In this document: in pieces, positions 5,587 to 62,499 of the stretch
How positions within the stretch are numbered: position 1 is the stretch's first letter
Layout: every line of letters starts with the position of its first letter
NCBI RefSeq assembly: GCF_006345805.1
Contig: NC_042999.1
Span: 18,972,001-19,036,000 of the forward strand
DNA: 64,000 bases
Direction: 5' to 3'
From: Octopus sinensis
Taxonomy: Eukaryota
Program-made: the position numbers and the translations under genes
The notes under the pieces: model-generated
What the model was told of the DNA's origin: nothing
Databases searched by the model: none
Seen by the model: only the letters and a program-made list of their open reading frames with translations

Positions 5587-5810
5587 TATATTTCTTTATT
5601 GCCTACAGGGGCCTAAACACAGAGAGGACAAACAAAGGGATTAAGTCGATTACATCGACCCCAGTGCGTAACTGGTACTTATTTAATCGACCCCGAAAGG
5701 ATGAAAGGCAAAGTACGCCTCGGCGGAATTTGAACTCAGAACGTAACAGCAGACGAAATACCGCTGAACATTTCGCCCGGCATGCTAACGATTCTGCCAA
5801 GAATATTATA
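5587..5810 (-). mobile_element. tRNA-derived SINE (GGGYAATAAAGAAATA-tail family)
   Basis: Core GACCCCAGTGCGTAACTGGTACTTATTTAATCGACCCCGAAAGGATGAAAGGC shared with 31010, 37600, 45925, 60625. Confidence 0.8.
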
Positions 5811-21731: not shown

Positions 21732-22575
21732 TGTTAGTTAGTTAGTTAGGTAATTTGGCTCAAAAGCAAATAGCAAGGCCATGTAGGGGGACATGGAGTT
21801 AAGTACAGGGTGGTGTTCATGTAAAGAGTTCAGGCCACTTGAGGTCCAGGGAGGCTTTGAACAAAGCGGTCGTCGGCATCTTCACCATCTCGTCTGGTAG
21901 CTTGTTCCACGGATCCGCAACCCGGACGGAGAAAGCTCCTCTCCTTCGATTGAGATGAAATCGTCGCAGGTAGGGCTTTTCGGAATGACCCCGCAGCCGA
22001 CGCTCCGGAGCAGGAGTGAAGAACAGCTCTTTCGAGAGGTTACACTTCCCGCTTATGATGTTGTGGGCGAGAATGAGATCACCACGGCGGCGGCGTTTTT
22101 CAAGAGAATAAAGGTCGAGCGTCCTCAGCCTTTCTTCGTAGGACAAATTTTTGAGACCATGAACCATGCGGGTAGCCAGCTTCTGGACTCTTTCGAGATG
22201 CTGTATGTCTTTGAGGAGATAAGGAGAAGAGGCTTGAATCCCATGCTCCAATATGGGTCTCACCAGCGTGACATAGAGTGGTAGGAATATGGCTGCTGTG
22301 AGCATTCCGAATGACCGTCGAATCAAAAACAGAATTCCGCGCGCTTTGTTGGGAGCATGGACGCACTGGGCCGAAGGCGAAAAGGAGGAATCCACCAAGA
22401 TACCCAGGTCCTTTACCTGATCGGTCCTCTCCAGCAGCAGACGACCCGGCTCGAAATCAAGTTGAGTAGCAGGAGTAGAGCCGACAGGCAGATGACAGCA
22501 CTTTGACACGTTCAGACACAGGTCCCAATCGTTAGACCACTTCCAAATTTGGTGGAGGCATCGATTATAAGCGAT
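21732..22575 (-). mobile_element. 5'-truncated CR1-type LINE (RT C-terminal region, ORF 21817-22596)
   Basis: VKDLGILVDS, LVRPILE, LERVQKLATRMV, LSYEERLRTLDLYSLEKRRRRGDLI, FSVRVADPWNKLP; (CTAA)n tail. Confidence 0.9.
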
Positions 22576-31009: not shown

Positions 31010-31365
31010 TATTTGTTTTTTGCCCACAAGGGAAAAAACATAGAGGAGACAAATAAGGACACACAAAGGGATTAAGTCGATTACATCGACCCCAGTGCGA
31101 TTTTAACAGGTATTTAATTTATCGACCCCTAAAGGATGAAAGGCAAAGTCGACCTCGGCGGAATTTCAACTCAGAACGTAGCGGGAGAGGAAATACCGTT
31201 AAGCACTTCGCCAGCGTGCTAACATTTCCTTCTATGAAATCCACAAATAAAAATTTGGTCGGCCCGAGGTTATACCAGGAGTAACTTGCCCAAGGTAATA
31301 CGCACTGGAACCTAAACCCGAACTATGTTGTTGGAAAGCAATCTTCTTACCACACAGCCATGCCT
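31010..31365 (-). mobile_element. Two adjacent SINE fragments (5587 family and CORE-like family)
   Basis: Similarity to other copies in the window. Confidence 0.7.
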
Positions 31366-35815: not shown

Positions 35816-36719
35816 GCGACTCTCTCGCATCAATACTTTCTCTTTTTACTTTTTTTTCCATGACAACAGTATCTTCCATATTACTTTAGCTTTATCATAC
35901 GTTTTTTTTTTTTACATATATAAAGCTAAAGTAGTTAAGAAGCTCGTTTTAGAACCTCGTGGTTTGAGTTCCTTTTTCCGATGCGCAGCGTCTTCAACGA
36001 GTTTCTTCTACTATAGCGCCGATACGACCAATGCCAATTGAGCATCTGAGCTGCGTAGAAACCCGTCATATCTGTGTGGGGGCGGAGTGACTACGTGTTT
36101 GTGTATCGTTGTGACTCTGTTTGACACCATCATCCCTCTGCTTGATGATCGGTGAAAAGGACAGACACCTACGTTTTCCCTTGTGTGCCAAATTGAAAGT
36201 AACTGGAAAGGAAATGCACTTGAGAGGCTGGAAATCGGCATTTTATGCAACACAAATAGAAAAAAATTTGTTCTCCTAGTTCAAAGTATTACCAGGCAGG
36301 GTATCTATGTAAACGTGGCCTCAATACATTCATTTTTTTGACATGAATGTAGAGGTATGAAGATATCAAAATTAGCTTTGTTTTAGTAGAGCAGTTTTCA
36401 CACAAATTCCTTGCTGCTTAACCTCTATTCGAGGAACTCGAATGGATTAACCCGTTGAAACCATTATAATGGAAACAAAATATGTGTATAAAGTGATTTT
36501 TTCAAAAACAATATAATTTTTTGGGAAGTACTTTTTTCATTTTTGTACTCTCTTTTTTGCAGCTTTCCCGCATAAAATTAAAGTTAGTTATGAAAGCCAG
36601 AATTGTTTTTATTATGATGCTATAAATATATGAATATATAACGACTAATCACACATCGACACACACTCAATTACACATACACACACACACACTCAGACAC
36701 ACGTACATGGTCGTACCAG

Positions 36720-37080
36720 TGGAGGCGCAATGGCCCAGTGGTTAGGGCAGCGGACTCGCGGTCATAGGATCGCGGTTTCCATTCCCAGACCGGGCGTTGT
36801 GAGTGTTTATTGATCGAAAACACCTAAAGCTCCACGAGGCTCCGGCAGGGGATGGTGGTGATCCCTGCTGTACTCTTTCACCACAACTTTCTCTCACTCT
36901 TACTTCCTGTTTCTGTTGTACCTGTATTTCAAAGGGCCGGCCTTGTCACTCTCTGTGGCACGCTGAATATCCCCGAGAACTACGTTAAGGGTACACGTGT
37001 CTGTGGAGTGCTCAGCCACTTACACGTTAATTGGGATCAACCGGAATTCTCGTCGTCGTAACCGACGGAGTGCTTCCATC
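36720..37080 (+). mobile_element. tRNA-derived SINE, near full length
   Basis: GGAGGCGCAATGGCCCAGTGGTTAGGGCAGCGGACTC head. Confidence 0.8.
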
Positions 37081-37599: not shown

Positions 37600-37895
37600 A
37601 TTATGTTTTTATTGATCACAAGGGGCTAAACATAAAGGGGGCAAACAAGAACAGACAAACGGATTAAGTTGATTACATCGATCCAGTGCATAACTGGTAC
37701 TTATTTAATCGAACCCGAAAGGATGAAAGGCCAAGTTGACCTCGGCGGAATTTGAACTTTGAACGTAGCGGCAGACGAAATACCTATTTCTTTATTACCC
37801 ACAAGGGGTTAAACACAGAGGGAACAAACAAGGCAGACGAAATTCCGCTAAGCATTTCACCCGGCGTGCTAACGTTTCTGCCAAATCGCCGCCTT
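37600..37895 (-). mobile_element. SINE (5587 family) with duplicated 3' tail
   Basis: Two tail motifs (~37605 and 37785-37808). Confidence 0.75.
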
Positions 37896-38082
37896 ATATA
37901 TTTAGCCAACATCTAGACAACATATATATTGATATAGAAGCAGGTTTCTGAACAGTCCAGCTTGAATTGAACAACTTTTAGTATTGGCGATATTGACATA
38001 TCTGTTGGAGTGTCATAAATTCATAACCCAGATTGAACACCTGCACTGTTTGTCTAAATTGTATATTTTTATCAAATATATG

Positions 38083-38295
38083 TAGAGGCGCAATGGCCTA
38101 GTGGTTAGGGCAGCGGACTCGCGGTCGCAGGATCGCGGTTTCGATTCTCAGACTGGGCGTTGTGTGTGTTTATTGAGCGAAAACACCTAAAAGCTCTACG
38201 AGGCTCCGGTAGGGGGTGGTGATCCCTGCTGTACTCTTTCACCACAATGGCGGTGCCCCAGCATGGCCACAGCTCAAGAGCTGAAACTGGAAAAA
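38083..38295 (+). mobile_element. tRNA-derived SINE (internally shortened)
   Basis: Head as 36720; ends with CAGCATGGCC-type tail. Confidence 0.7.
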
Positions 38296-39763: not shown

Positions 39764-42700
39764 CTAGCAGCATAGCCCGGCGTTGCCCGGGTATGTAAGA
39801 GCCCCTAGTAGGCAACGACTAATCCCAATGTAGTCCTTTCCCTCCAGGGAACGAAGGTGCATGTGGACGTTGCAATGTCTTGTCTTCACTGGAATACTTC
39901 TGTATATACGATGTTCCTAGCTGTCCGTTTGGGCGAAAACATGAAAACATCATTGCGCCTCCCAACGCGTGAACAGCCCCGTAGAGTTGACCGTGGGCGA
40001 AGCACTGTTCGCCCAAATGTAACCCAGCGACTTGTAGCGTTTGGCCTTGGGATTTATTGATGGACATTGCAAGCAGAGTTTAACAGGAAACTGAGAACGC
40101 CTGAAGTGGATTGGTAGGTCAGCGCCCGACGGTTGAAGGTGCATCCGTGGAATGAAGACGTCCTCTCCCTTCCCACAACCGGTAAGTATTGTGGCCGTTA
40201 TTAAATGTGGTGCCAAAGTGTTTCACAACCAAACGTGTGCCGTTGCACTGTTTAGGTGGAACCAAATTCCTGATGAGCATAATGGGCGCACCGACTTTTA
40301 ACTTCAGGATGTGTGGTGGCAGGCCTGGCGGTTCAAGTGAATTCAGGAATTCAACAGGATAATCGGCAAGCTGGGCGGGGTCTGCTGTCCTATCTATAGA
40401 TTTGTAGACGTGGACATCACCAGGAATAACTTCAAGTAGCTGGATATTGATGGAGTTGACGGTTGTATTTTTGGGTGCGAGAATAGCTCTGCCTGCCAGC
40501 CATTTTAGGTCGCGTAAATTGTTTTGTAGGTCGTGGAAGACAGCGTCCCGGAGGCTAGCAGGGGTGTCGACAATGGTGCAAAGTGAGTCCAATTGAACGT
40601 AGCCATCCGCATCAGACAGCATCCTATTTTCACCGAGCGATAAGAGGTCCCTGGAGAATGCAGCGGATCCGCTGTCACCAATTAACTGCGCGCGCATGTT
40701 AGTTTGGAGGTGCAAGGGCCGCACATGTGCCAAAGAGCTGACGACTTAAGGCACGCGCGCACGGCATCGGCACGGGTTCCTTTTGGAATAACAGGTAGAG
40801 TCTGCCTGAAGTCTCCTGAAAGAAGTAAAGTTAATCCTCCCATGGGGGCCGTAGAGTCTCTGATGTCTTGCAGGGACCTGTCCAGTGCCTCAAGGGCGCC
40901 TTTGTGTGCCATAGTGCACTCGTCCCATACGATGAGTTTGCATCTGCGAAGAATGTCGGCCTGTTCTGAGTTCTTGGCGATGTTGCAGATAGGTGACTCG
41001 GACTTTGCCAGATCGAGCGGGAGTCTGAAGGCAGAGTGGGCGGTTCTGCCACCCGGAAGCAACGTGGCCGCGATACCAGAGGAAGCTACAGCCAGGGCAA
41101 TGTCCGTGTTGCGTCTGACCTCTGCCAGAATTAGTTTAGTGACGAAGGTTTTGCCTGTGCCGCCGGGTGCATCAAGGAAGAAAATCCCCCCACGTTGCTG
41201 TCTGACAGAGTCTACGATGGTGTTGTTGTAGCTATGCGCTGGTCTGGAAGCAGCCGTGGTTCATTATCTTGGACGCACTGGTGCAGTTCCTCAATGCAGT
41301 AGGAAGTTTCGCGTAACAATTCAGCAGACATAACATTGGCGTGTTCACGTGTGGGTGGTGGAAGGCCGTACTCTGTTAAAGCAGACCCACCCATATCGAT
41401 GACAGCGTCTTCGAGTTGAATGAGCGCAAAATGTAAATGAAGTTGGTGAACGTGATCTCGGCGGAAGGGCAGTGTTGCTGAGCCGTACGTAAGAAGTCGT
41501 GTGACATGTCATCCCTGTATTTCATCCAGAGACTTAGTGGATGACTAAGCTGACATTTTTGAAGAAGGATTGCGAAAAGATGTCGTAGGGCCGAATGCGT
41601 TTGCAGTAAAGCACCCTCTGCCATCGTGGCGTCCCACTGGGAGTCATCCTCTAGAAGGCCAAGTCTCATACATGCTTCCCTGAAGGTGTCGCACAGAACC
41701 CCATTGACGGTACGTATATTGGCGAAACCTGTTGGACCAGTGACCTCATGTAGAAGGAGACGGAGGTAGAAGCATTCTTGCTGGTTTGGCGGGATGTTGT
41801 AAACTCGACCCAGGCAGGAGTCAAACTTGACGCCTGGGAAGCTTTCGACGTTTTTGCCGGATTTCCGTCGAACCCAGGTGTTTTTAGACCACACGAAGTA
41901 CGATGGGCTGTGGGTACAAAAGCGTTCGAGCGAAGTCATCACGTTGGCATAATTTGAAGAAACCAGTCAACGTTGTGTCTTTAGGGCTGGTGGCTATCTG
42001 CACAGCACTTTGCTCTGTGAAGTAAATCCGCTGTCCATTTTCCAAGTGTACAGAAAGCTGCACCACAGCCGGGTGTCTCTGATGGAGCGGGAAGCCGTAA
42101 ATGCGCCAAAACGCTTCGTTGCTGCTGAGAAGTAACGGCCAGCCAAGTAGTTGGACACTTCGTCGCGACTGGTGGTCCTCTGGATGCTGAACATGGCAGC
42201 ATCGCTGCCTTTGTTGATATATTTGCAGACATATTGTATTGACTGATGATGGAGCTGCAGAACTCAACGTTGACGTGGGCTTTGAATATCTTCGACAGGA
42301 GAGGACAGTGGGGGACAATGTAGCTGTTGTCCACTTGATGTCGCCCAACCGTAATCGTGCGGCCTCCATTGGCTGGACTCCTTCGTTTGTACAGCGGATA
42401 CCCATCGCCGCCTGTTTGAGTCTCCAAAGTGAACCGTTTAGGGAATCCCTTTGAGCAGGCTAATCCGTTTTTGTAGCATGGTGTGTTGGCGTAATTTGGT
42501 CCACAGGGCCCGTGTACCATGGTAGTGCGGACAATTTCGTAGAGTCCGGGGTCCTCATCGGGGTCAGGAATCTCGGCGGAAATGAATTGTCAATGTCATT
42601 AGTCTCGATTTTATGAGTGAGCCAAAATTAAGATGTGAGCATGTGGCAAGCCCTTCTTTTGCCACTCGACCGAAAACATGTGGCACCTGACATGCCCGAA

Positions 42701-45700
42701 AATCTGACCCGTAACTATCAAATCCTTCATTTTGCCCAAATTCAGACGGAAAACCCTAGCAACGATGTCGTGTCGATGGGTGTGAGATTGACCCGGGAGG
42801 ATTTCGAGAGTGATTTCGTCGCAGCTGGGATTGCACGTGTAGGTGAAAAGAGGTCCGGCCGGCCGTAAATGCGCACGTAGGTCAAGGCGTCTTGGGTCCT
42901 TTCACGCATATATCGCGGTCCTCCCGTGAAGGTGGAGGGTAGAATGCATGGCTTGCCGATGTTGCGAGGGTCATTTTCTTGTGTTGCAAACCGTCACGGA
43001 GATGAATGTAGGAGTCGGAGCGAAGTTTGGTCTGATTAAGTTAATGTATAGCAGCCTTTCCGATTCCATTTTTGCGGCCATGTCGACGGCGAACTGGTTG
43101 AATAGCTGACGACAACGGGGCAATAAGTTGAACTCACCCTCCCTGACCATGAACCGGTATGAGTAGAACGCCCTGCAGGAAACCGTCTTTGATGCCGCAG
43201 TAGTTTGATTGGAGGGCTGCCGTAAAGGAATTCCGAAGTGGTAGCCGTCTTCCCCATAAGGGAAAAGCAATGGATACTGAAGCGCGTCATAAGATCTGTG
43301 AGTCTCGCTGATCCTGTGTAGGTTGTTACCACGGGAGGAGATGATTATGTCACGGCTGTTGTGTTGCTCTCCGTGTATAACTGCGGCAATTTCGTTGCAC
43401 GCAGGTGCGTTGAAACGGCGTTCGTGCCCCCGGGGTCGTTTATCAGCATCAATGACAACGGTGACGTTTGGAGAATGGAGCACTGTCCAAGGCATATCTG
43501 AAGCTGCAGACGTAGCTGTTGATATCATGAAGCATGGTTGGAGACGGAGAAGAATGTCTTTGCGGGGAACATAGCTTGTACCCGGTATTATTCCAAGGCG
43601 TGCATCAACCTGGTGGTTGTAGTCGGCAATGAAGTATATTTGGAGAAAGAAGACTGCTGAATCTCGTCTGGCAGAAGTGACCCAATAAGATGGTAGACCT
43701 GTCCCTGCACTTTGAAAGTAGGCATCCAGCCTTCTCTGGGAGGAATTTTGGCCCCGAAAGAGGTCATTTGGAATGAGCAGTTGTACTTTCGAATTATTTC
43801 AAGGAATTGTGACGAATCGGGGGTTAAACCCGCCGCGAGATCCTTCAGTGGTTGAGGTGGTTCCCGTAGGGGTGGCAGGTCCACTTTGCCACCAGAGCAG
43901 CACAAACCAGGTGGCTCTCCGGGCCATTTCTTGGCTTTGCAAAACTGGCATACAATTGTCATTGACCCTATCTTGATGTCGTCACGCAAGGAGAAGTTAA
44001 TTGTGGCGTCGTAGTTGAATGCTAGTGACAACCAGAAAGCGGGGGCAGGGGTACGTACACCACGAATGATATCCCGACGTTTGTTGATACTCTCAAGTCG
44101 AGTGCACCGTGCCTCAGCAGATTCAGATGCACGTGCGACAGCGGTAGCAGTGGCATCCCTTGAAAGCCTTTCAGCTCTCGCCTCAGCACCCTCTGAAGCC
44201 CTAGCAGAAGCAGTGTTAATGCCATGTCTGGATGTCCGAATAGTCCGTTGGTGTGGAGTTTCGGCAGATCGAGCCCTGGCTGTGTTTGCGGCGTTAGCAG
44301 CTTGGCGAGCTCTCCTCTGTTGAGGTGTTTCGGCAGCTTTGGCCATGGCTTTGTTTGCGGCGTCAGCATCTTGGCGAGTTCTCCTCTGCTGTGAGGTTTC
44401 GACAGATCGTGTCCTGGCAGTGCTAGTGGCGTTAGCCGCATTCCAAATGGCCCTTTGTTCGGGGTTCTCGCGAGCTCTGCGGATGGAAGCACAGTAAGAA
44501 GCCCGCATGTTTTGGCTGGACTGTTGCTCTTTCGTCAACCTCGAGCGGAGGGAAGATCTGTACGCTGCGACCCTTGCAAGTCGGGTAGAACGGTCGCTAG
44601 TAGCTTCAGATGCCTGAGCAGCGGCATAACGGGAAGCTGTTTGCGAGAGGCGCAAGGCGGTTTCCTCGTGGGTCTCGCGTGCCCTTCTAGCCCTAGCAGC
44701 CGATGCCTTGGCCGTCCGAGGGCTGAGGAGGGTCCTTCTCTTCTTGGGTGGCATTTTGGTGGATAGCAATGTGTTTGGCAAAGGTGTAATAAAAAGGAAC
44801 ACGTGGGGTAAGTATTTTGGTGGATAGCAATGTGTTTGGTAAAGGTGTAATAAAAAGGAGAGCTCGTGGGGGGTAAGTATCCGAAAATGTATAAAAATGT
44901 ACAAAAACGGCCAAAAAGCTGGCAGCAATGTGAGTGACAACAACGAAAAAGTCAAAAGTGATCAAACTGAACAAACGAAAGGAAAAGTTTTTTGATGCAC
45001 ACGACAAAAGTGGTTTATAATAAACCAAGAGTTTGCAAGTAGCGTCCGAGGACCGTTAGGGTACGTCAAAAATTGAAGGTAAAACGTTTGGGGTGGTAGT
45101 TATAAGAAAGTTTAAACCCAAAAAGTATTCGAATAACTTGCGGCTGCAGCAGCTATTAGCAGAAGTGGCGGTGTTGGGGGAAGTCTCGAATGTAATTTCT
45201 TCCTGGTAGGAATTGGTTGGATCGAATTATCGATAGCTAAAAAGGTCAAGTTGCGTCCCCTAGACAGTCTGGTTTGTGTTTAATACACAAATTTGTTTGC
45301 TATGTGTGCCACATATGATTAAATTAACCGATTTTTTCCAATAATGTATCCTATTGGAATAAAAAGGGCTATATAGCTCCTTGGAGCAGACATGATGCTC
45401 GTTGAAAAAAAAAAAAGATTCCTGCCAATTTGTGAAAGATATTGTCGAAAATATGTCATCTTGAATTTGAACGCGATTTCCCAAAATGGCATGATTTTAT
45501 CGATGTTTCTGATGGTAAGGTATTGCATGGAAAACTAACGTCAGAATTGAGTTCTTAGGGTAACATTAAGCTTGACCATGAGTTTGGTGAAAATCGATTG
45601 CAAGTTGTGAAAACTACCATAGATAATGCGTTGCATAAAAAAAGCTTAGATTCTCGAGTTGCGTCCCCTAGACAGTCTGTGGTTCATGTTTATGATTCTC

Positions 45701-45904
45701 GACCCCATGTCGAATTTATCAATTTTTTTCAGAACTGGGGGAACTTTTCAAAATTTTCGCTTCGTTAGTTTTGAATTATGACATTGGGCTATGTGTGTGT
45801 CAAGTTTCATCAGAATCGGTTGAAAGCCGTGGTCAGGGTGAGGGTACGAGAAAACAGACACACAGAAGCACGCACAGACAAACTGCCGTTTATATATAGA
45901 GAGA
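39764..45904 (-). mobile_element. Full-length autonomous-type Helitron
   Basis: Minus strand: A|TCTCTCTATATATAAA 5' end; 3' hairpin CCCGG-GCAACG-CCGGG then CTAG|T; AT target; encodes Rep/helicase. Confidence 0.95.
39886..44754 (-). pseudogene. Helitron RepHel (23-aa repeats, Zn finger, HUH Rep, PIF1-like helicase), multiple frameshifts
   Basis: MPPKKRR start; CQFCKAKKWPGEPPGLCCSGGKV; GRPDLF..TYTCNP; VEWQKKGLPHAHIL; MVHGPCG; FFLDAPGGTGKT; IVWDECTM; GDFRQTLPV; MSINKSQGQTL; CFAHGQLY. Confidence 0.93.
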
Positions 45905-45924
45905 TGGAGACTTGTCCTTGAAAA

Positions 45925-46150
45925 TATTTATTTCTTTATTGCCCACAGGTGGCTAACCATAGAGGGTCAAACAAGGACCAACAAAGGGATTAGGTCAATT
46001 ACATCGACTCCAGTGCGTGACTGGTATTTATTTAATCGACCCCGGAATGATGAAAGACAAAGTCGACTTCGGCAGAATTTGAACTCAGAATGTAACACCG
46101 ATCGAAATACCGCTAGGCATTTCGCTTGGCATGCTAACGATTCTGTCAGT
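45925..46150 (-). mobile_element. SINE (5587 family)
   Basis: Shared core and tail. Confidence 0.8.
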
Positions 46151-53305: not shown

Positions 53306-53783
53306 CCATATATATGTAATTTTTCATTTTTATATTTATACTAGCATTAATGACCCGTCATTGCCGGGTTATAGTGCTAGTGCATGTATATACGTGTATA
53401 TATATATGTGTACATATTACATGTACATCTATATATATACATCTACACATAAAATACAAAATACAAAGTTATATATTGATATCGCTAGTGATAACAATAC
53501 TCAAAATATATAACAGACTGGAATTGTTAGCCCGTCTCTTTTAATTTTGATCAATTGTATCTTGTCCTCACACTTGTATAGAAGTGTGGCTACATTCCAG
53601 CCTACCTCTACTTCTGGGGCGGGGGCATTTTAAATTTTTTTCCGGGACGTCCTACGTCCCAGATATAAATGTAAAAATAAAATATTTCCACTTTGCAAGT
53701 TCGAGTCGAGTACTCCCTTTCACGCTCCGTTGACTCGAACCTTGCTTCTATTGTGGCGAATTTATCGCCTCTGATTAGATACC

Positions 53784-53903
53784 TTTTACTGATATTCAAA
53801 ATCGTACACTGAATCTCAATTTATACATACTTTGGCTTGGAGTATATATTTTCGCGGAGAAGCTAGCGTGTCTAAATGATTAATGATGTCATATATACAT
53901 TAT
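53784..53903. repeat. 120-bp inverted repeat, left copy
   Basis: Reverse complement of 62380-62499 with one visible mismatch. Confidence 0.9.
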
Positions 53904-53945
53904 AGTCGCACCAAGACACTTTTCGAAGGTGCTTTCCTCCATGTT

Positions 53946-55849
53946 GTTTTATTATTAGCCACTAGGGGCTACATAGATGGGACAATACAATCGGGAAAAT
54001 GAATAATGAATTATGAAGTTTGTACAATGTGGTGCAATGCCCACTCGATCCCCGAAATCGAGCGGTTACATTTCGTCATTTATTTTTATTCGTCAACAAT
54101 ATTTTCCAAATAAAACATTTTATACATTTTCAACATACATTTCAAAAGTTTTACAAAGTTCAACATTTCCTTTTTTTTTCCGAATTTAAAGTTCTTTTTA
54201 TCATTTCCAAATTAAAGTTTTCACAATACCTTTTCTTTTATATATACTCCATTATGTCTACCAAATCTGAGTAAACTTCCATCGTTCGAGGCCACCTTGT
54301 AAGTCGGCATTTCATATGTTTTAACACGTTCTCGCCAGCTGCCTCGATGAACGCCTCGGCGTCGTTCTCGTGGACGAGTGCACCTGTTTCTTTCCATTCG
54401 GTGCCCATCCTGACCCACGTATATCCGTTTGTTCCGCTTATTAAATCTTCCATCTCCTCACAGTGCTTGTGATGGATCAACGTTCCATAGTACTTGAATT
54501 TTCTATTCGTACCTACGTTTTCTCTAGTTTTTCTCTTAGGACTTACTTCCTCTTTTTTCTCCTCCCTCGGTTTCTCTCTTTCTCTCTTTTTGCTTTCTCT
54601 TCTTTCTTTTTCCTTCTCTTGTCTTTTTGGCTCTTTGTCTACCGTCTCTCTACCATGTGCCTTAAGTTCCTTTCCTGTTGTTTCTTTTCCTTTTTGCATA
54701 CCATCTTTTCCTTTCTCTTGGTTCTGTTCCTTCTCTTGTTCTTTTCCTGCTTTTTCTCTTTCCTTTAATGTACTTTCCTTTTCTTTCTCTTGCTTCTGCC
54801 TTGGCTCCTTCTCCACTACTTCTGCACCCTGTGAATTTTGCTCCTTTTCTACTATCTTCTTCCCTTTGTTTTCATTTTCCTTCAGTGCGCTGTTACTTCC
54901 CTTCTCTTGTTTCTCCGTTATTTCCTTTTCCTTGTTTTCGCTGTTCTTTCCTTCGTGTTCGTTTTCCTTCTCACCACTTTGTGTCTCTTTTTGCTCCGCT
55001 GTGAATTCATACAGCGGACATTCCTTTTTTATGTGCCCTCTTGAACCGCACAGGTAGCAATTCGGTTTTCTGCCTTCCACTATTACACTAATTGTTTTCT
55101 CGTTTTCTATTTCTATTTGGAAGGGAAATCTTTCGATGTCTTCCATTGTGGCCATCAGCCACAACTCTACTCCGAATCCCTTCCAATTTACAACGTTCGT
55201 CTCCTTAATTGACCCTATTTCTACTTCCTCTTTTGCTGCCCCAATAATGGCTGTTACCAGCATTTCTGTTTTAATATTTGGGGGCACCTTTGGGACTCTT
55301 ACCCGTACCCCTCGTCTTCCTTTATACGTCGGCCACATGGTGAAATTTTCCGCTTTCAGGACAGTGGAAGCCACTTCCTTTGTTGCGCATCTCACCTCCA
55401 CCGTACCATATTTCTTTCCTCTGTCTACAAAAGTCGCTTTTTTCATGATGTCCCCCAGACATTTCTCTATTTCTTCAATCGTCACTCTCACCAGTTTTCT
55501 CGTGTTTCTATCTTGCGTTCTATACGTTATCGTCTTGTTATTTTTCTCTTCTATTGTTTCCACAGGCGGGACCAGCTTCACGCTGTCACCCTCCCTTTTG
55601 ACGAACTTCTCGTATTCCTTCAATTGTTCTTTTCTAAAGAACACTTCTTTTATTCTAAGTGACTCGTCACTTTTTGTTGTGGCGACCCCCGCGTAAGTCT
55701 CCATGACTTGAGGGTCGACACACCTTCTATAAAAGGTTCAAACACGCAGCGGCAAACGCCTCGCGCGATTCAATTTTTGACAATTTTTTAACAGTTTTTT
55801 TCCAAATTTTCACATGCAAAAAATAACTAACCAACACACTAGCTTGAAG
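53946..55849 (-). mobile_element. ORF1-only non-LTR-like element, unit A
   Basis: Single ORF, 3' tail CCCCTAGTGGCTAATAATAAAAC, flanked by CCATGTT direct repeats. Confidence 0.7.
54238..55704 (-). CDS. L1/Tx1-type ORF1 (gag-like) protein, 488 aa, CCHC zinc knuckle
   Basis: Intact ORF; CYLCGSRGHIKKEC; RRM-like N-half; long E/K-rich linker; globular-looking C-terminus. Confidence 0.85.
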   Translation of the reverse strand: METYAGVATTKSDESLRIKEVFFRKEQLKEYEKFVKREGDSVKLVPPVETIEEKNNKTITYRTQDRNTRKLVRVTIEEIEKCLGDIMKKATFVDRGKKYGTVEVRCATKEVASTVLKAENFTMWPTYKGRRGVRVRVPKVPPNIKTEMLVTAIIGAAKEEVEIGSIKETNVVNWKGFGVELWLMATMEDIERFPFQIEIENEKTISVIVEGRKPNCYLCGSRGHIKKECPLYEFTAEQKETQSGEKENEHEGKNSENKEKEITEKQEKGSNSALKENENKGKKIVEKEQNSQGAEVVEKEPRQKQEKEKESTLKEREKAGKEQEKEQNQEKGKDGMQKGKETTGKELKAHGRETVDKEPKRQEKEKERRESKKREREKPREEKKEEVSPKRKTRENVGTNRKFKYYGTLIHHKHCEEMEDLISGTNGYTWVRMGTEWKETGALVHENDAEAFIEAAGENVLKHMKCRLTRWPRTMEVYSDLVDIMEYI

Positions 55850-55856
55850 CCATGTT

Positions 55857-57511
55857 ATTTCTTCATTACCCACCAGGGGCTACGAAGAATGGCGGACATA
55901 ACAAAACATGGGGGACATAGAACAATATGATTTATGAGCAAATGAAAATGAAAAAAATGATAATATGAAAGCGATTCTAGCGGCCCCCTCCGCCAGCATC
56001 ACTTACCTGTCCTTTTGTTTTCACTGTCACCTGAATGTTCATTCCCAATACGAAGACCATCCATATCCATTCTTACTCCGAAACTGTCCTCCATATATTC
56101 CACGAATTCATCGCTCATTCTTGTATCTTTCACCTCCCAATTCTCCCTTTCACACCTCAACACAAACTCATCTATATTCTTCTTTTCCAGCACTGCATAT
56201 CTGGTCCCATCCATTTCATACCATTCATACTCCTCCATTACCCTTTCAACCTCTTTCTGTTCAGTCACAATATAAATGTTCGGCCTCGGTTCGTTTTCAA
56301 ACTCTTGTCTGTCTGTATTGTTATTTTTCTTTTGTTTTCTTGTTGGAGGGGAGCGGGTGGGTTCACTGTCTGCAGGGGAAGGGTGGATTCAGAGGGTGCG
56401 GGTGGTGTTGGGGTGGGTGGGGCTTCGCACAGTTTTTCTTTTTCTTTCTTTTTCTCTTTTTTCTTCCTTCTTCCCACTCTTGTTGCATCTCCTCTTCTTC
56501 TGTCGTTTCTTTTTCCCTTTGGTTCTCTTTGGTTTCTTCCTCTTTTGGGGCTTCCGCGACGATTTCCTTTTCTTTTTCCTTTAGTGGTGGAGGGCAGTAG
56601 GCTCTTATGTGACCCCTCATGCCACACTTGTAGCACCTGGGCGCCCTACCCTCCACCCACACTCTCATAATAATATTTCCAGTTTTTATACTGTCCGTAA
56701 GCTTTTCTATAACTTCCGCCTCCGTCTGTATGTTCATTACTAGTGTGGCACCTCTCACGCCTTCATAGTTCATAATTGCGTGGAGGATGTCCACTTTATC
56801 TTCATTTCCTTTGATAACCGCAGCCGTTATTAATTCGCCCTCTAGGTGTGGAGGTATTCCTTCCACCCTAATTCTGGTGGTCCTTCTATTCAAATACGAG
56901 GGGAACAAGTAAAACTTTTCTGTACTCACCACCTTGGCTGCTATATTCCTGGCTGCTTTCTCACTTTTAAATTGTACCGTTATGGTTCCATATTCTAATC
57001 CTTTTGTCATGTACACAATTTCTTCTCCTGTCCGTTTGAAAGCCTCTTCAATTGCTTCCATGTTAATCACTTCCATTTTTCTACCTCCATTCATAAATAC
57101 TTTATATTTAATGGTTCTACGATGGAACCAGTCTCCGCGCCCTGCTAGAGGCAACAGCTCAACCTCTCCGTTCTCCTCCTCCTTCATGAACTCCTGGAAG
57201 TCCGTCAACTTAGCCAGGTCTATCTCTTTTTCTGTTGACTTCTTCGTTATACCTGCATAGGTGCTTTCAATTTTTTTCACCGCCAACTCCTCCTCAGATG
57301 TCGACGAATTTTCAGAGAAATTTCTCCCTTCCATCTCATCCGTTTGGTAGAGGCGGCTCATAGTCGCCTCAGACCGAAAAACGGCCTCCCGAACAGAAAA
57401 CGTGCGACGCACAGAACCAGTGCGACGCGAAACCGCACCAACCGACGTTCCAATTCCGCAACCACAATTCACTTTTTGTTGTTTTTCTTTTTTAACCGAA
57501 TTTTACAGAGC
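55857..57511 (-). mobile_element. ORF1-only non-LTR-like element, unit B (1655 bp)
   Basis: 5' GCTCTGTAAAATTCGGTTAAAAAAG; 3' tail CCCCTGGTGGGTAATGAAGAAATA. Confidence 0.75.
55977..57361 (-). pseudogene. ORF1 (gag-like) CCHC protein, frameshifted
   Basis: VWVEGRAPRCYKCGMRGHIRAYC; C-terminal pieces in other frames end VSDAGGGGR*. Confidence 0.8.
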
Positions 57512-59175
57512 TATTTCTTTATTACCCACTAGGGGCCACGAAGAGGGGACATTACAAAACATGAGGGACATAAAACAATGCGGTTAAATTATGATTAAAT
57601 GAATGTTAAAAATGAAAAAATGATAACATGAAAGCAATGCTAACGGCCCCCTCCGCCAGCATCACTTACCTTTCCGTTTCCTATCACGATTCCAAAGTCT
57701 TTCACCTCACCTTTCATTTCTCTCTCAAACCTCTCTATCATATCATTTCTCATATATTCTGACAAACAATTTATACGTAGTTCATTGCACTTGCTCATCA
57801 AAGAGCCCATGAGTTCGAAATCGAATACCGCATAACTTCCGTCCTCATACTCCTGCCATACATTGTCTTCAAAAAGCCTTCTTGCATTCTCTGTATCTCC
57901 CTTCCTCACAACACACAAAAAGTAGGACTGGGGCTTTTGTATGTTTTTGTATGTCTGATTTCGTTTTTCTTGTAGGCGGGGTGGGTGGGATTGCTGTTTG
58001 CGGGGGCAGGATGGGTCTCCAAAGGTGTGGGTGGTGTTTGGGTAGGTTGGGGCTTCACACAGTTTTTCCTTTTCTTTCCTTTTCTCTTCTTTCTGACCTC
58101 TTCATACTCTTTTTGCGTCTCTTCCTCATCTGTCGTTTCCCTTTCCATCTGCTTCTCTTGATTTCTTCTTCTTTTGGGGCTTCCTCTTTGGAGTTTCCTC
58201 AACAATTTCCTTTTCTCCCGGTGGGGGAGGGCAGAAGGCTCTTATGTGGCCCCTCAGGCCACACTTGTAACAACGTGGAGCTCTGCCCTCCACCCACACT
58301 CTCATAATCACGTCTCCCAATTTAATGCTCTCCGCCAGGTCCGCCAGCACCTCACTCTCCGCCTGCACGTTCAGCTCCACTGTTACTCCTCTCCAGCCCT
58401 CGGTCCTGACCGAGGCATGGAGAATATCAACTTTCTCCTCGTGGCCGCTGATCACAGCCGCCACAATCCATTCAGCCTCCACGTTTGGTGGCACTCCCTC
58501 CACCCTTACTCGTGTAATCCTTCTATTCATGTACATAGGTAGGAGTGTTACCTTTTCTGACCTCACCGCCCTCACCGCCATCTTCCTCGCTGCAGTCTCA
58601 CTCTTAAAATGTACCACTACGGTACCGTACTTCGATCCTCGAGTCAAAAAAATGATTTCCTCCTCCGATTTTCTCAGGGCCTCCTCTATCCATTCCATTT
58701 TACGATCTCTATTTCTTTCTTTCGTTCAGGAACACCCTGTAAAGTATAGTCCTCTTATTGTACCATTCCTTTCTCTTTGGCGGTGGTTCCAGTTCTACCT
58801 CGCCGCTGTCCTTCCTCATATACCTCTGGAAACCTGGCAATTTTTCTAGGTTTATTTCATTTTCCTGTTTCGTCTTCTTTTTTGCAACTCCTGCGTACGT
58901 TTTCCTGTTTTCAGTCTCCACATTTTTTACCTCACCGATTTGCTCGTTTTCAGAGTTCGATGTCTCCGACAAGCTCTCAAATATCCATTCTTCCTCCGAC
59001 TCCTCCACAAGGAGTGGTCATCCATCTCCTCCCGCCTGACAGGCCAAAACGGCCGTCAAAACAGAAAAAGTGTAACGCGCAGAACCAGTGGAACGCGAAA
59101 CCGCTTTAACGCCGTTCAAAATTTCCACAACAACAACAATTCTTTTTGATCTTTTTTAACCGAATTTTACAGAGC
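57512..59175 (-). mobile_element. ORF1-only non-LTR-like element, unit C (1664 bp)
   Basis: Same 5' start and 3' tail CCCCTAGTGGGTAATAAAGAAATA. Confidence 0.75.
57640..59025 (-). pseudogene. ORF1 (gag-like) CCHC protein, frameshifted
   Basis: VWVEGRAPRCYKCGLRGHIRAFC; segments 58709-59008, 58126-58698, 57640-57918. Confidence 0.8.
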
Positions 59176-60624
59176 GCAAAAAAACGCGACCTTTTTTCTC
59201 TACATTGTATACTTTATAGACAATAGTCTTTTCTTTAATTTAGCTTTTTAATATCCATCTGGACTATTCTATTTCTGCACGCTAATTTTATTTTTAATTT
59301 ATTCCCATTCATGTGAAACCACTCATTCAAGTTCAAATCATTGATGCAATTTTATACCGATTGCTATTTTTACTTTTGTTATGTTACGATTATATTATAC
59401 TTTAGTTTGATTTTAATTATTACTTGCTACATATAATTCAATTGTTATTATTATTTTTATTGTTAAAGTGAAAGTATCTGACATAAAATAGAGAAACGTT
59501 TTTGTTTCACTTTTAACACTTAATACTGAAATAGTGGAGAAGATATGATATTGCTATGGGCTCGCTCTATGCAAGAAGCTGAACATTTCTTTTCCCCATG
59601 AAACTACATGGACCCTAAGGAAGGCATGTGTAAAATTTGAATGGAATTGGTTGTGTAGTTCTCAAGTTTTAGAGAATCGTAGTGGAGATATTGTTGTGGG
59701 CTCGCCCTAGGCAAAATGGTAAAAAAAGGTTTTTGCTGATGACACTCCCGGGACCTTAAGTAAGGCATGTGTAAAATTTTAATGAAATTGGTTGTGTAGT
59801 TCCCAAGTTTTAGGGAAACAGACAGACAGACAGACACACATTCTCAGTTTTATATATATAAAGATTATTTTTTTATTCAATGCAAACGCCACCATATATA
59901 ATTTTAGCTCATATGTTAATATTTTTTATCGTGATATCATAATATCTCAACCGCCAGGAATTAATGAAACAAATATTAACAATTCAAATAAAATATAAAT
60001 TTAGTTAGATTCTGCAAAATAAAATTAGAAACAATTTTCCCAGAGGGTACGGTTGTTTCTCTGTCATCAGCATCTATAGCAACTACAGCAAGGTATGTGA
60101 AAAAGAAAGATTTTTTTAATGTTGGAAGAAATGAGAACAGATGCGTTACAATCATCTAACTTCTATAATATTTTCTGAGAATCTTTAGTTATAAAGTGGA
60201 AAGTATGGTACATTGCAGTACATTACATGTAACTAACATCCTTGTTGTAAGAATGACACAGCGCCATAGTACTGAGGCACAAGTTCATACAACTAAATGC
60301 CATCTCGGTTTGAATTCTCGTTTTAAAAATTTTATCTTCTTTATTCACAGAAATACGAACAATAGTTATTAATAACATGTACACCAAAGATTCTCATAAG
60401 TTTTGACATAGTAAAGAGAAGCAAAATCATTGTTAGTATAGCAAAAGAATCAAATAAACCATATGGGGTATTTACATCTCAGTCTATGGTCTGAGGCGGA
60501 AACGAAACTTCTGATGAAATATTTCTTAGGAATCTTACACACACCAACATGAGGCCTCTCTTGTCTATATGAATATGACACATTTGTAACAACAGTTGTT
60601 GTGCCCGTAATATGTTCACTTCTT

Positions 60625-62379: not shown

Positions 62380-62499
62380 ATAATGTATATATGACGTCAT
62401 TAATCATTTAGACACGCTAGCTTCTCCGCGAAAATATATACTCCAAGCCAAAGTATGTATAAATTGAGATTCAGTGTACGATTTTGAATATCAGTAAAA
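62380..62499. repeat. 120-bp inverted repeat, right copy
   Basis: Reverse complement of 53784-53903. Confidence 0.9.

What the first reader, a model, noticed from the sequence alone, without database searches (positions are those of the whole stretch)
53946..59175. Head-to-tail array of three diverged RT-less, ORF1-only retroelement-like units
Seen: three same-strand units of 1.65-1.9 kb. Each has a short 5' UTR, one ORF with an RRM-like region and a single CX2CX4HX4C knuckle (EGRxPxCYxCGxRGHIxxxC), a short 3' UTR and a shared tail. No ORF2 (endonuclease/RT) follows any of them. B and C are clearly diverged in protein sequence and A is more distant, so this is not a recent segmental copy. Known: this ORF architecture is typical of L1/Tx1-clade ORF1, and gag/ORF1-only elements exist (Drosophila HeT-A arrays, mammalian HAL1). 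Inference: a protein-coding non-autonomous retrotransposon family, mobilised in trans, that stacks onto its own ends. I do not know of a description in this lineage but cannot check.
Basis: partly seen in the sequence, partly recalled or inferred. Interest (0 to 1): 0.88.

Follow-up and report, generated by a model that had tools for sequence, protein, structure and literature searches.

The report
Stacked ORF1-only retrotransposons in octopus
Three diverged copies of a small octopus jumping gene, which keeps only the RNA-binding gene of its parent LINE and has lost the copying enzyme, sit head-to-tail inside a Helitron transposon; other octopus loci show the same pattern, so this is a real parasitic element family of a kind already known from mammals and flies.

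Summary
On the minus strand lie three head-to-tail units: C 59190-57512, B 57511-55856 and A 55855-53945. Each has one ORF1-type gene (two RRM-like folds, one CCHC knuckle, a further C-terminal domain) and a shared 45-nt tail. None has an ORF2. Only A is intact.

The window is octopod DNA. In O. vulgaris and O. sinensis, related ORF1s are followed by a 1132-aa APE/RT ORF2 and the same tail, so the gene is a genuine LINE ORF1 and the tail a LINE tail. About 22 further ORF2-less units at six other loci form two exclusive, well supported ORF1 clades. dN/dS among them is 0.15-0.54. One 5'-truncated copy has a 15-bp target-site duplication.

Everything carrying this tail (ORF1-only units, full LINEs, SINEs) stacks head-to-tail. 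The window's array, like four O. vulgaris arrays on different chromosomes, sits at one site inside a non-autonomous Helitron.

Best reading: HAL1-like, ORF1-only, L1/Tx1-type non-autonomous retrotransposons, mobilised in trans and added by repeated insertion at one junction. The components are known (HAL1, HeT-A, Tx1L in Tx1D); the combination in cephalopods appears undescribed. Repbase and Dfam could not be checked.

The parts
59191..59864 (-). 5' part of a non-autonomous Helitron ('T') that hosts the array
   Evidence: 88-96% identical to the sequence just upstream of arrays at L004, L007 and L008. Its first bases TCTTTATATATATAAAACTGAG align with the 5' end of the autonomous Helitron at about 45905 in this window.
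57512..59190 (-). Unit C: ORF1-only element of subfamily B2, decayed
   Evidence: ORF pieces lie at 58709-59008, 58126-58698 and 57640-57918 in shifted frames with stops. The middle piece is 83% identical in protein to L003_B, and C groups with L003B, L009u5 and L009u2 at 100/98 support.
58231..58272 (-). CCHC zinc knuckle of unit C
   Evidence: CYKCGLRGHIRAFC; Pfam zf-CCHC hit at residues 142-157 of the 190-aa piece.
57512..57575 (-). 3' terminal tail of unit C
   Evidence: Aligns with the tails of the LINE, the A and B units and the SINEs. Unit B's head follows with no spacer.
55856..57511 (-). Unit B: ORF1-only element of subfamily B1, lightly decayed
   Evidence: Its head lacks the first 15 nt present in C. 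It is 84-88% identical in protein to the intact 457-aa ORF of L009 unit 4. It has one frameshift near 56424 and a stop before the C-terminal domain.
56363..57361 (-). Unit B ORF1, N-terminal part (TYAG motif, RRM-like domains, CCHC at 56594-56635)
   Evidence: Met at 57361 corresponds to Met1 of the intact L009 unit 4 protein.
55999..56268 (-). Unit B ORF1 C-terminal domain, out of frame with the N-terminal part
   Evidence: 89 aa, 100% identical to the C-terminal domain of L009 unit 3, and continuous with the N-terminal part in L009 units 4 and 5.
55856..55919 (-). 3' terminal tail of unit B
53945..55855 (-). Unit A: ORF1-only element of the A clade, with an intact ORF
   Evidence: 90.6% identical in DNA to unit A' in O. 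vulgaris locus L004. The A clade has 98/98 support.
54238..55704 (-). Unit A ORF1, 488 aa, uninterrupted (CCHC at 55018-55059; K/E-rich linker; C-terminal domain at about aa 405-470)
   Evidence: AlphaFold model; fold search.
53945..54008 (-). 3' terminal tail of unit A
   Evidence: Over about 40 nt it is nearly identical to the tail of the autonomous LINE (L004 16270-16333, L009 18064-18127).
53331..53944 (-). 3' part of the host Helitron-N ('T'), ending in a hairpin plus CTAG
   Evidence: 88-90% identical to the sequence just downstream of the arrays at L005 and L009, and over its distal 220 bp at L004. Its end ACCCGGCAATGACGGGTCATTAATGCTAG|T aligns with the 3' end of the autonomous Helitron at about 39790.

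Best explanation
The three units are members of two old lineages (A, and B with subfamilies B1 and B2) of protein-coding, non-autonomous non-LTR retrotransposons of an octopod L1/Tx1-type LINE group.

Each unit is a 1.65-1.9 kb element made of:
- a short 5' UTR;
- a complete ORF1 (N-terminal TYAG motif, two RRM-like domains, one CCHC knuckle, a charged linker, a C-terminal domain);
- a short 3' UTR;
- a roughly 45-nt 3' tail that it shares with the autonomous LINE and with SINEs.

The elements have no endonuclease or reverse transcriptase. Inferred: their RNA is copied into the genome by the ORF2 protein of the autonomous relative, which recognises the shared tail.

The array sits at one defined site inside a non-autonomous Helitron. 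Inferred: it grew by repeated target-primed reverse transcription at the same junction, the 3' edge of the array or tail, so that the oldest element (C) is 5'-most and the youngest (A, still intact) is 3'-most.
For: SHOWN

(a) ORF1 homology and an autonomous partner.
- A profile of the three ORFs finds 939 proteins at E<1e-3, and the named ones are octopod.
- In L002 (O. vulgaris) and L001 (O. sinensis) the homologous ORF1 is followed directly by ORF2. In L002 that ORF2 is an intact 1132-aa APE + RT + zf-RVT protein and is followed by the same tail; in L001 it is degraded.

(b) The ORF2-less state is inherited.
- About 22 further ORF2-less units lie at L003, L004, L005-7, L008, L009 and L010.
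- In the ORF1 tree they form two exclusive clades, and every sampled autonomous ORF1 lies outside them.

(c) Coding constraint.
- dN/dS is 0.15-0.54 in all 16 informative pairs.
- Intact 457-471-aa ORFs occur in L009 units 4, 5 and 6.

(d) Retrotransposition of an ORF2-less RNA.
- L003 1018-1268 is a 5'-truncated B-type copy: the end of the C-terminal domain, the 3' UTR and the tail, flanked by a 15-bp duplication AGAATGCCGCTAAAC.
- Unit heads vary by 0-15 nt at junctions.

(e) Shared tail.
- The tail is shared by the LINE, the A units, the B units and the SINEs.

(f) Stacking is general.
- LINE on LINE, period 5278 bp (L002).
- A' followed by a LINE, with a sandwiched duplication ATTCCAG(C/T)CTGTTATAT (L004).
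- B, then A, then a SINE within one duplication pair (L003).
- B then a SINE, followed by a second SINE, with a repeated duplication (L010).
- Five B units, three A units and a LINE (L009).

(g) Same host site.
- The window, L004, L005-7, L008 and L009 share the Helitron-N flanks at 87-96% identity but hold different fills.
- For example, the upstream flank is 95.7% identical between the window and L007, while their A units are only 71% identical. The fills are therefore independent of the host copy.

(h) Gradient consistent with sequential addition at the 3' edge.
- In the window, decay runs C > B > A.
- dS to the nearest sampled relative is 0.52-0.62 for C, 0.26 for B and 0.20 for A.
- In all mixed arrays the order is B units, then A units, then a LINE or SINE.

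PRECEDENT
- Many Tx1-clade elements are target-specific. Tx1 inserts in the piggyBac derivative Tx1D, and SINEU-3 inserts in tandem in Mariner-N4, sandwiching a duplication (PMC4494074).
Against: - No genome-wide copy count or consensus could be made. The loci were reached through gene models, so the sample is small (11 loci) and biased.
- An unsampled autonomous LINE with an A-type or B-type ORF1 cannot be excluded.
- There is no transcript or protein evidence.
- Trans-mobilisation is inferred only from the shared tail.
- The eight near-identical 1.78-kb units of the L005-7 array all share one frameshift near residue 47. That looks like tandem amplification by unequal crossing-over, so not every array need grow by insertion.
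- All five sampled Helitron-N copies are occupied and no empty site was seen. It is therefore not excluded that the Helitron spread after it had acquired an element.
- Most internal junctions lack a target-site duplication, which also fits end-to-end template jumping in a single event.
- Placement in the Tx1 clade rather than L1 proper was not tested by an RT phylogeny with reference sequences.
- The tail shows only a 4-bp hairpin with no covariation.
Confidence: 0.75

Rival explanations
1. The array was made in one event. The reverse transcriptase jumped end-to-end from the 5' end of one tail-bearing RNA to the 3' end of the next (A first, then B, then C), giving a composite insertion.
For: - Unit junctions are precise, tail against head, with no spacer and no duplication between units.
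- In L003 the composite of B, A and a SINE is flanked by a single duplication pair, ATATATTTAACCT. In L010 the B unit plus SINE1 is flanked by one pair.
- In L004, L008 and L009 the full LINE is the 3'-most element. That is expected if ORF2p copies its own RNA first.
- End-to-end template jumping is documented for the R2 reverse transcriptase (cited in PMC4494074).
Against: - L004 has a duplication sandwiched between A' and the LINE, and L010 has one between SINE1 and SINE2. These indicate separate events.
- In the window, the decay gradient C > B > A and the different dS to nearest relatives point to different ages.
- B's head is 15 nt shorter than C's.
Confidence: 0.15
2. The array is a local tandem duplication (unequal crossing-over, satellite-like amplification) of one ORF2-deleted LINE remnant, followed by long divergence in place.
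For: - The L005-7 array of eight near-identical units sharing one frameshift shows that this process does occur in the family.
- B and C have the same architecture and are alignable along their whole length.
Against: - Each window unit is much closer to units at other loci than to its neighbours. C is 83% identical to L003_B but 57% to B. B is 84% identical to L009 unit 4. A is 89% identical to L004 A' but 31% to B.
- The unit boundary coincides exactly with the end of the LINE and SINE tail.
- Heads are truncated to different extents.
Confidence: 0.05
3. The units are host genes: a domesticated ORF1-derived gene family (as L1TD1 is in mammals) arranged as a gene cluster.
For: - dN/dS is below 1.
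- ORFs are intact in several copies.
- Genome annotations call them genes: 'CCHC-type domain-containing protein', 'EPM2A-interacting 1-like'.
Against: - The family has many dispersed copies, with frameshifted and stop-bearing members, including B and C here.
- A LINE and SINE tail lies at every 3' end.
- A 5'-truncated copy carries a target-site duplication.
- The units lie inside a Helitron and are interleaved with full LINEs and SINEs.
- Purifying selection is also expected for retroelement lineages whose masters need their own ORF1p.
Confidence: 0.05

Closest known systems
HAL1 (half-L1) of mammals
   Same: A non-autonomous LINE derivative that encodes only ORF1p and depends on the ORF2p of an autonomous relative. 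It arose more than once (PMC5753468, citing Bao & Jurka 2010). Here too the tree requires two separate ORF1-only clades.
   Different: From my own knowledge, HAL1 derives from L1 proper, with a Type II ORF1p (coiled coil, RRM, CTD) and a poly(A) end, and it is dispersed. The octopus units have a Type I ORF1p (RRM-like domains plus CCHC), a specific 45-nt tail shared with SINEs and no poly(A). They stack at one site.
HeT-A / TART / TAHRE telomeric arrays of Drosophila
   Same: A gag-only (ORF1-only) element, HeT-A, coexists with RT-encoding relatives, and all form mixed head-to-tail arrays.
   Different: Those belong to the jockey clade, carry oligo(A) tails and are added to chromosome ends. 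The octopus arrays are chromosome-internal: for example 12.6 Mb into 118.9 Mb, and 115.8 Mb into 225.7 Mb. They lie inside a Helitron.
Tx1L in Tx1D (Xenopus) and other target-specific Tx1-clade LINEs
   Same: An L1/Tx1-type LINE nested at a defined site in a non-autonomous DNA transposon family (PMC4494074). The ORF1 is of the RRM + CCHC type (PMC5203782).
   Different: The host here is a Helitron derivative, not a piggyBac derivative. The inserts are mostly ORF2-less derivatives and multi-element arrays. Tx1-clade membership of this ORF2 was not tested phylogenetically.
SINEU-3 tandem insertions in Mariner-N4_AMi (crocodilians)
   Same: A non-autonomous retroposon inserted repeatedly at one site of a DNA transposon, giving tandem copies that sandwich a target-site duplication (PMC4494074). 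L004 and L010 show the same pattern.
   Different: SINEU is a short non-coding element. Here the stacked elements encode a 460-490-aa protein under purifying selection.

Membership tests
ORF1-only non-autonomous LINE derivative (HAL1-like kind) | Encodes a protein homologous to the ORF1p of an autonomous LINE | tested here: met
   30-39% identity to the ORF1 that precedes the APE/RT ORF2 in L002 and L001 (tblastn E 1e-35 to 1e-37). Profile search.
ORF1-only non-autonomous LINE derivative (HAL1-like kind) | No endonuclease/RT ORF2 between ORF1 and the 3' end | tested here: met
   No tblastn hit of the family's ORF2 in the window at E<10. Only 140-290 bp separate the ORF1 stop from the tail.
ORF1-only non-autonomous LINE derivative (HAL1-like kind) | Shares its 3' end with the autonomous partner | tested here: met
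   The roughly 45-nt tail is conserved among the LINE (L002, L004, L009), the A units, the B units and the SINEs.
ORF1-only non-autonomous LINE derivative (HAL1-like kind) | Propagates as such: multiple copies at different loci, with hallmarks of target-primed reverse transcription | tested here: met
   Units occur at six other loci. The P0135 cluster has 7 proteins at >=90% identity on 6 O. vulgaris sequence records. A 5'-truncated ORF2-less copy carries a 15-bp duplication. A genome-wide count was not possible.
ORF1-only non-autonomous LINE derivative (HAL1-like kind) | Mobilised in trans by the partner's ORF2p | not testable with these tools
   Inferred from the shared tail only; needs a retrotransposition assay.
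HAL1 proper (L1-derived) | Type II ORF1p (Transposase_22: coiled coil, RRM, CTD) and a poly(A) 3' end | tested here: not met
   Pfam finds only zf-CCHC and no Transposase_22. The 3' end is a specific tail without poly(A).
L1/Tx1 group of non-LTR retrotransposons (for the autonomous partner) | ORF2 with an N-terminal APE endonuclease, an RT and a C-terminal Cys-His motif, closest to L1-type ORF2p | tested here: met
   Exo_endo_phos E 1.9e-15, RVT_1 E 8e-31, zf-RVT E 5e-9. Human L1 ORF2p matches at E 2e-71 over residues 3-868, against 1e-24 for R2.
Tx1 clade specifically | RT phylogeny places the element with Tx1 reference elements | not tested
   No reference RT set (Repbase) was on hand. PMC13282606 reports 13 recently active L1-Tx1 families in O. 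vulgaris.
Tx1 clade specifically | Type I ORF1p (RRM plus CCHC knuckle) | tested here: met
   The CCHC knuckle is found by Pfam. The RRM-like folds are supported only by an AlphaFold model and weak Foldseek hits to tandem-RRM proteins.
Tx1 clade specifically | Target-sequence-specific insertion | tested here: inconclusive
   Five Helitron-N copies carry arrays at the same internal site. Arrays also exist outside it (L003, L010). No empty site was seen and no genome-wide statistics were possible.
HeT-A-type telomeric retrotransposon array | Arrays located at chromosome ends | tested here: not met
   The related arrays lie far from the ends of O. vulgaris chromosome records. The window's array is flanked on both sides by ordinary repeats.
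Domesticated ORF1-derived host gene | Single or low copy number, intact, in conserved synteny | tested here: not met
   The family is multi-copy with decayed members, and the units are nested in a transposon with LINE tails.

The most novel reading that the evidence does not exclude
One Helitron-N family may act as a landing pad. The LINE's endonuclease would re-cut the same junction after every insertion, so each array would be a time-ordered log of retrotransposon activity: B types, then A types, then the current LINE and SINEs. The ORF1-only elements would be hyperparasites that keep their own packaging protein, under selection, to compete for the LINE's ORF2p. Two such lineages would have arisen independently and persisted across octopod speciation.
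Probability: 0.3. Interest if true: 0.75.

Novelty: new variant of a known kind. Interest (0 to 1): 0.6.

Why it matters
- ORF1-only LINE derivatives are known from few lineages (mammalian HAL1, Drosophila HeT-A). Why a non-autonomous element should keep ORF1 remains an open question.
- Octopus offers two independent, long-lived ORF1-only lineages under purifying selection. They share a defined 3' tail with an intact autonomous partner and with SINEs, which makes a compact natural system for asking what ORF1p contributes in cis versus in trans.
- The arrays at a fixed site in a Helitron family may preserve the order of past insertions. If so, they would help date bursts of LINE and SINE activity in cephalopod genomes, where repeats make up about two thirds of the DNA (PMC13282606).
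- Practically, many octopus 'uncharacterized protein' or 'CCHC-type domain-containing' gene models (and one 'EPM2A-interacting 1-like') are these ORF1s. At least one model (P0030) fuses two neighbouring elements.

Tried and rejected
- Word-indexed protein search with unit B's ORF found nothing. The exhaustive profile search was needed instead.
- Rfam gave no family in the window.
- Sequence search of PDB with the ORF1 profile returned only zinc-knuckle matches.
- Tail structure: only a 4-bp hairpin with no covariation, so a structured recognition element is not supported.
- Intron idea: the conserved CAG|GTAAGT near the 3' end of B-type units looked like a splice donor. It is simply the last codons, GGT AAG TGA (Gly-Lys-stop), of the intact ORF. 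The O. vulgaris gene model P0030, which splices from there into the next unit, is probably an annotation artefact.
- Terminal inverted repeats for the host repeat: an inverted copy of its 3' end next to L008's 5' end is a neighbouring partial copy, not a terminal repeat. The termini instead match Helitron ends.
- The 6-nt 'ACATGG' on both sides of unit A is probably not a duplication. The upstream copy aligns with A-type 5' UTR sequence in L004.
- Loci for P0002 and for the window's own A protein are not on record, so the window's species could not be named beyond Octopus.
- No empty copy of the host Helitron-N exists in the DNA held.
- Names for the non-octopod ORF1 relatives were not available.


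Full report
**1. What is in the window**

Reading the minus strand from 59190 to 53945 gives three consecutive units.
- C: 59190-57512, 1679 bp.
- B: 57511-55856, 1656 bp.
- A: 55855-53945, 1911 bp.

Each unit has a short 5' leader and one gag-like ORF. The ORF carries a TYAG(V/I) motif near the N-terminus, a region of about 200 residues that aligns among the three units, and a single CX2CX4HX4C knuckle within EGRxPxCYxCGxRGHIxxxC. A charged linker and a further alignable C-terminal domain follow. After 140-290 bp of 3' UTR comes a shared tail...TGTCCCCTCT.TG..GCCCCT.GTGGGTAATAAAGAAATA.

B's head abuts C's tail with no spacer. A's head abuts B's tail in the same way.

B and C share 57-61% of residues and 72-85% of bases. 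A shares 31% of residues with B.

Only A has an uninterrupted ORF, of 488 aa. Compared with intact relatives, B has one frameshift near 56424 and a stop before the C-terminal domain. C has at least one frameshift and several stops.

No ORF2 is present. tblastn with the family's own 1132-aa ORF2 gives no hit in the 64 kb even at E<10.

**2. What the ORF is**

Pfam recognises only the zinc knuckle. A word-indexed search found nothing. An exhaustive profile search found 939 proteins at E<1e-3 and 238 at E<1e-10. The named hits come from Octopus bimaculoides, O. vulgaris, O. sinensis and Argonauta hians, annotated as uncharacterised or 'CCHC-type domain-containing'. The window is therefore octopod DNA.

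Fetching the loci of two hits was decisive.
- In O. vulgaris OX597840.1 (L002) the homologous ORF1 is followed within a few bases by an ORF2. One copy of that ORF2 is an intact 1132-aa protein.
- That ORF2 has Exo_endo_phos, RVT_1 and zf-RVT domains. It matches human L1 ORF2p at E 2e-71 over residues 3-868, against 1e-24 for R2.
- About 230 bp after ORF2 comes the same tail, CCCCTTGTGGGTAATAATAAAA.
- O. sinensis L001 shows a second, more distant lineage: ORF1 followed by a degraded ORF2.
- A non-octopod relative (L011) is also followed by an RVT_1 gene.

The window's ORF is thus a genuine LINE ORF1, and the tail is a LINE 3' end.

An AlphaFold model of A, built from a 26-sequence alignment, has pLDDT 75-86 over residues 20-220. 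It shows two beta-alpha-beta-beta-alpha-beta domains before the knuckle and a third such domain at the C-terminus. Foldseek's best PDB matches are tandem-RRM proteins (Raver1, nucleolin RBD12, hnRNP A1 UP1), but weakly, at E 1.6e-3 to 1e-2.

RRM plus CCHC is the Type I ORF1p, which PMC5203782 describes as consistent with the Tx1 clade. PMC13282606 lists 13 recently active L1-Tx1 families in O. vulgaris and does not mention ORF1-only forms.

**3. Are the units deletion remnants or a lineage of their own?**

Seven further loci were fetched, and six of them (L003, L004, L005-7, L008, L009, L010) carry ORF2-less units. They hold about 22 such units with the same architecture as A or B.
- L003: B-type, then A-type, then a SINE.
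- L004: A' (90.6% identical in DNA to A), then a full LINE.
- L005-7: eight A-type units with a period of 1780 bp.
- L008: three A-type units, then a LINE.
- L009: five B-type units, three A-type units, then a LINE.
- L010 (O. sinensis): a B-type unit, then SINEs.

A maximum-likelihood tree of the ORF1 core puts all ORF2-less units into two exclusive clades. The A clade has support 98/98 and the B clade 100/100. All sampled autonomous ORF1s lie outside them. Window C groups with L003B, L009u5 and L009u2 (subfamily B2). Window B groups with L009u3 and L009u4 (subfamily B1). Window A groups with L004 A'.

dN/dS among ORF2-less units is 0.15-0.54 in every pair that could be estimated. Full-length ORFs of 457, 471 and 469 aa survive in L009 units 4, 5 and 6.

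A 251-bp, 5'-truncated B-type copy at L003 1018-1268 contains the end of the C-terminal domain, the 3' UTR and the tail. It is flanked by a 15-bp direct repeat, AGAATGCCGCTAAAC. That is the signature of target-primed reverse transcription of an RNA that already lacked ORF2.

One cluster of A-type proteins has seven members at >=90% identity on six O. vulgaris sequence records.

Together these results reject both 'three local deletions' and 'single-copy host gene cluster'. They support a protein-coding, non-autonomous retrotransposon family. More precisely there are two families, each old.

**4. The tail and its other users**

The last 45 nt or so are conserved among the autonomous LINE, the A units, the B units and a SINE family. 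In the window that SINE ends at 5589, 31010, 37785 and 45929. The A-type tail is almost identical to the LINE tail.

The only predicted structure is a 4-bp hairpin without covariation. Any recognition by the reverse transcriptase is therefore inferred from sequence conservation alone.

**5. Stacking**

Head-to-tail stacking is a property of everything that carries this tail.
- Full LINEs form a tandem array with a period of 5278 bp in L002.
- ORF1-only units precede a LINE in L004, L008 and L009.
- SINEs follow ORF1-only units in L003 and L010.
- A SINE dimer lies at 37.6-37.9 kb in the window.

Junction details vary, as follows.
- In L004, A' and the LINE are separated by ATTCCAGCCTGTTATAT, and ATTCCAGTCTGTTATAT recurs after the LINE. 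This is a sandwiched target-site duplication, hence a separate insertion at the end of A's tail.
- In L010 a 17-bp sequence recurs before the B unit, after SINE1 and after SINE2.
- In L003 the whole composite of B, A and SINE is bounded by one ATATATTTAACCT pair.
- Most other junctions are blunt, tail against head. Heads differ by 0-15 nt; window B lacks the GTCGCGTTTTTTTGC that C has.

**6. The host site**

The 674 bp upstream of C (59864-59191) and the 614 bp downstream of A (53944-53331) are not unique DNA.
- The upstream piece recurs immediately upstream of the arrays at L007 (95.7%), L008 (90%) and L004 (89%).
- The downstream piece recurs immediately downstream of the arrays at L005 (89.7%) and L009 (88%), and over its distal 220 bp at L004 (87-89%).
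- These loci lie on four different O. vulgaris chromosomes.

All copies start at TCTTTATATATATAAAACTGAGAATG, after TA-rich DNA. All end at ...ACCCGGCAA(C/T)GACGGGTC.TTAATGCTAG|TA. Both ends align with the termini of the Rep/helicase-encoding Helitron that lies at about 39790-45905 in this same window.

The host is therefore a non-autonomous Helitron of about 1.2 kb, and the arrays sit at one internal site.

The fills differ from copy to copy and do not co-vary with the flanks. The window and L007 share 95.7% in the upstream flank, but their A units are only 71% identical. The elements therefore entered the copies independently.

This mirrors Tx1L in the piggyBac derivative Tx1D, and SINEU-3 in Mariner-N4 with tandem copies sandwiching a duplication (PMC4494074).

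Two caveats apply. All five sampled copies are occupied and no empty site was seen. Arrays also occur outside this Helitron (L003, L010).

**7. Mechanism**

Shown:
- The units are LINE-derived and lack ORF2.
- They share the LINE's tail and are dispersed.
- At least one ORF2-less copy carries the marks of target-primed reverse transcription.
- Their ORF1 is under purifying selection.

Inferred:
- Their RNAs are reverse-transcribed by the ORF2p of the autonomous relative through the shared tail.
- The endonuclease nicks again at the 3' edge of an existing tail or array. Either the downstream Helitron sequence that it recognises stays intact, or the A-rich tail end itself resembles the target. 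New copies are therefore added at the 3' side.

Three observations fit sequential addition:
- the constant order of B types, then A types, then a LINE or SINE, in all mixed arrays;
- the decay gradient C > B > A in the window;
- the rising similarity to the nearest relatives (dS 0.52-0.62 for C, 0.26 for B, 0.20 for A).

Two alternatives remain open. Single-event template jumping is a serious rival for blunt junctions and for composites bounded by a single duplication pair. Unequal crossing-over clearly contributes in the homogeneous L005-7 array, whose units share one frameshift.

**8. Comparison with known systems, and novelty**

In function the units resemble HAL1: ORF1p-only, dependent on L1, and arisen several times (PMC5753468). 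They also resemble HeT-A, which is gag-only and forms mixed head-to-tail arrays with RT-encoding relatives.

They are not members of either family.
- They have no Transposase_22-type ORF1 and no poly(A), so they are not HAL1.
- They are not telomeric and not of the jockey group, so they are not HeT-A.

The nesting in a DNA transposon and the tandem insertion are Tx1-clade habits. Tx1 membership of this ORF2 was not tested by phylogeny.

I found no description of ORF1-only L1/Tx1 derivatives, or of these arrays, in cephalopods in the searchable literature. Repbase and Dfam could not be consulted.

I rate it a new variant of a known kind. It is of solid interest to transposon biologists and modest interest beyond that field.

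Noticed in passing
window 53331-53944 and 59191-59864 (-); L004, L005-7, L008, L009: The DNA on both sides of the array is a dispersed non-autonomous Helitron of about 1.2 kb. It starts with 5' TCTTTATATATA... and ends with a 3' hairpin plus CTAG|T. Every one of the five sampled copies is occupied at the same internal site by a different mix of tail-bearing retroelements.
   Followed up: partly
window ~39790-45905 (-): A large Helitron with Rep/helicase-like ORFs, broken into several frames (ORFs at 40119-44955). Its two termini are homologous to those of the small Helitron that hosts the array.
   Followed up: partly
window 5589-5800, 31010-31230, 37603-37930, 45929-46145 (all -): SINE copies end in the same tail as the ORF1-only units and the LINE. 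The copy at 37.6-37.9 kb is a head-to-tail dimer with one internally deleted and one 5'-truncated member.
   Followed up: partly
L003 8595-8640, 10264-10290, 12288-12310; L010 9425-9460, 11057-11075: The 5' ends of B-type and A-type units at some loci begin with AGAAACGT(T/C)AGCACGCC, the same motif that opens the SINE. This suggests a shared 5' module or promoter, or chimeric origins.
   Followed up: no
window 53784-53903 vs 62380-62499: A 120-bp segment inside the Helitron's 3' part is absent from the homologous O. vulgaris copies. It is 119/120 identical, in inverted orientation, to a sequence 8.5 kb away. This looks like a recent local templated insertion and is unexplained.
   Followed up: partly
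L004 11166 vs window 53944-53529: The O. vulgaris copy L004 lacks the first 415 bp of the Helitron's 3' part, which the window, L005 and L009 retain. In L004 the A' tail is joined directly to ATTCCAG..., so a deletion accompanied or followed an insertion there.
   Followed up: partly
L003 10001-13015 (O. vulgaris gene model CAI9718410.1 = P0030): An annotated 'hypothetical protein' splices the C-terminal domain of a B-type unit to the middle of the next A-type unit, using the Gly-Lys-stop codons GGTAAGTGA as a donor. It is probably an annotation artefact. Many octopus 'uncharacterized' or 'CCHC-type' proteins (and one 'EPM2A-interacting 1-like') are these ORF1s.
   Followed up: partly
P0048, P0121, P0132, P0097, P0064; L011: Non-octopod relatives of the ORF1 (410-861 aa, from unnamed ENA assemblies) form their own clade. 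The longer ones (P0048, P0121, P0132) share a C-terminal '...FP.DVG...' domain with some octopus members. One (L011) is followed by an RVT_1 gene, so the ORF1 type is widespread.
   Followed up: partly
window 21817-22596 (-): A 259-aa ORF resembles the C-terminal region of a CR1/L2-type LINE reverse transcriptase (judged from memory of the motif pattern). It is unrelated to the family studied: the L1/Tx1-type ORF2 gives no tblastn hit there.
   Followed up: no
window 38100-38290 and 36670-36900: SINE copies that appear tRNA-derived (GCGCAATGGCCTAGTGGTTAGGGC... on the opposite strand), of the type common in octopus genomes. The tRNA origin is judged by eye; no tRNA scan was run. TA/TATG microsatellites are extensive at 51.8-52.8 kb and 28-35 kb.
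   Followed up: no
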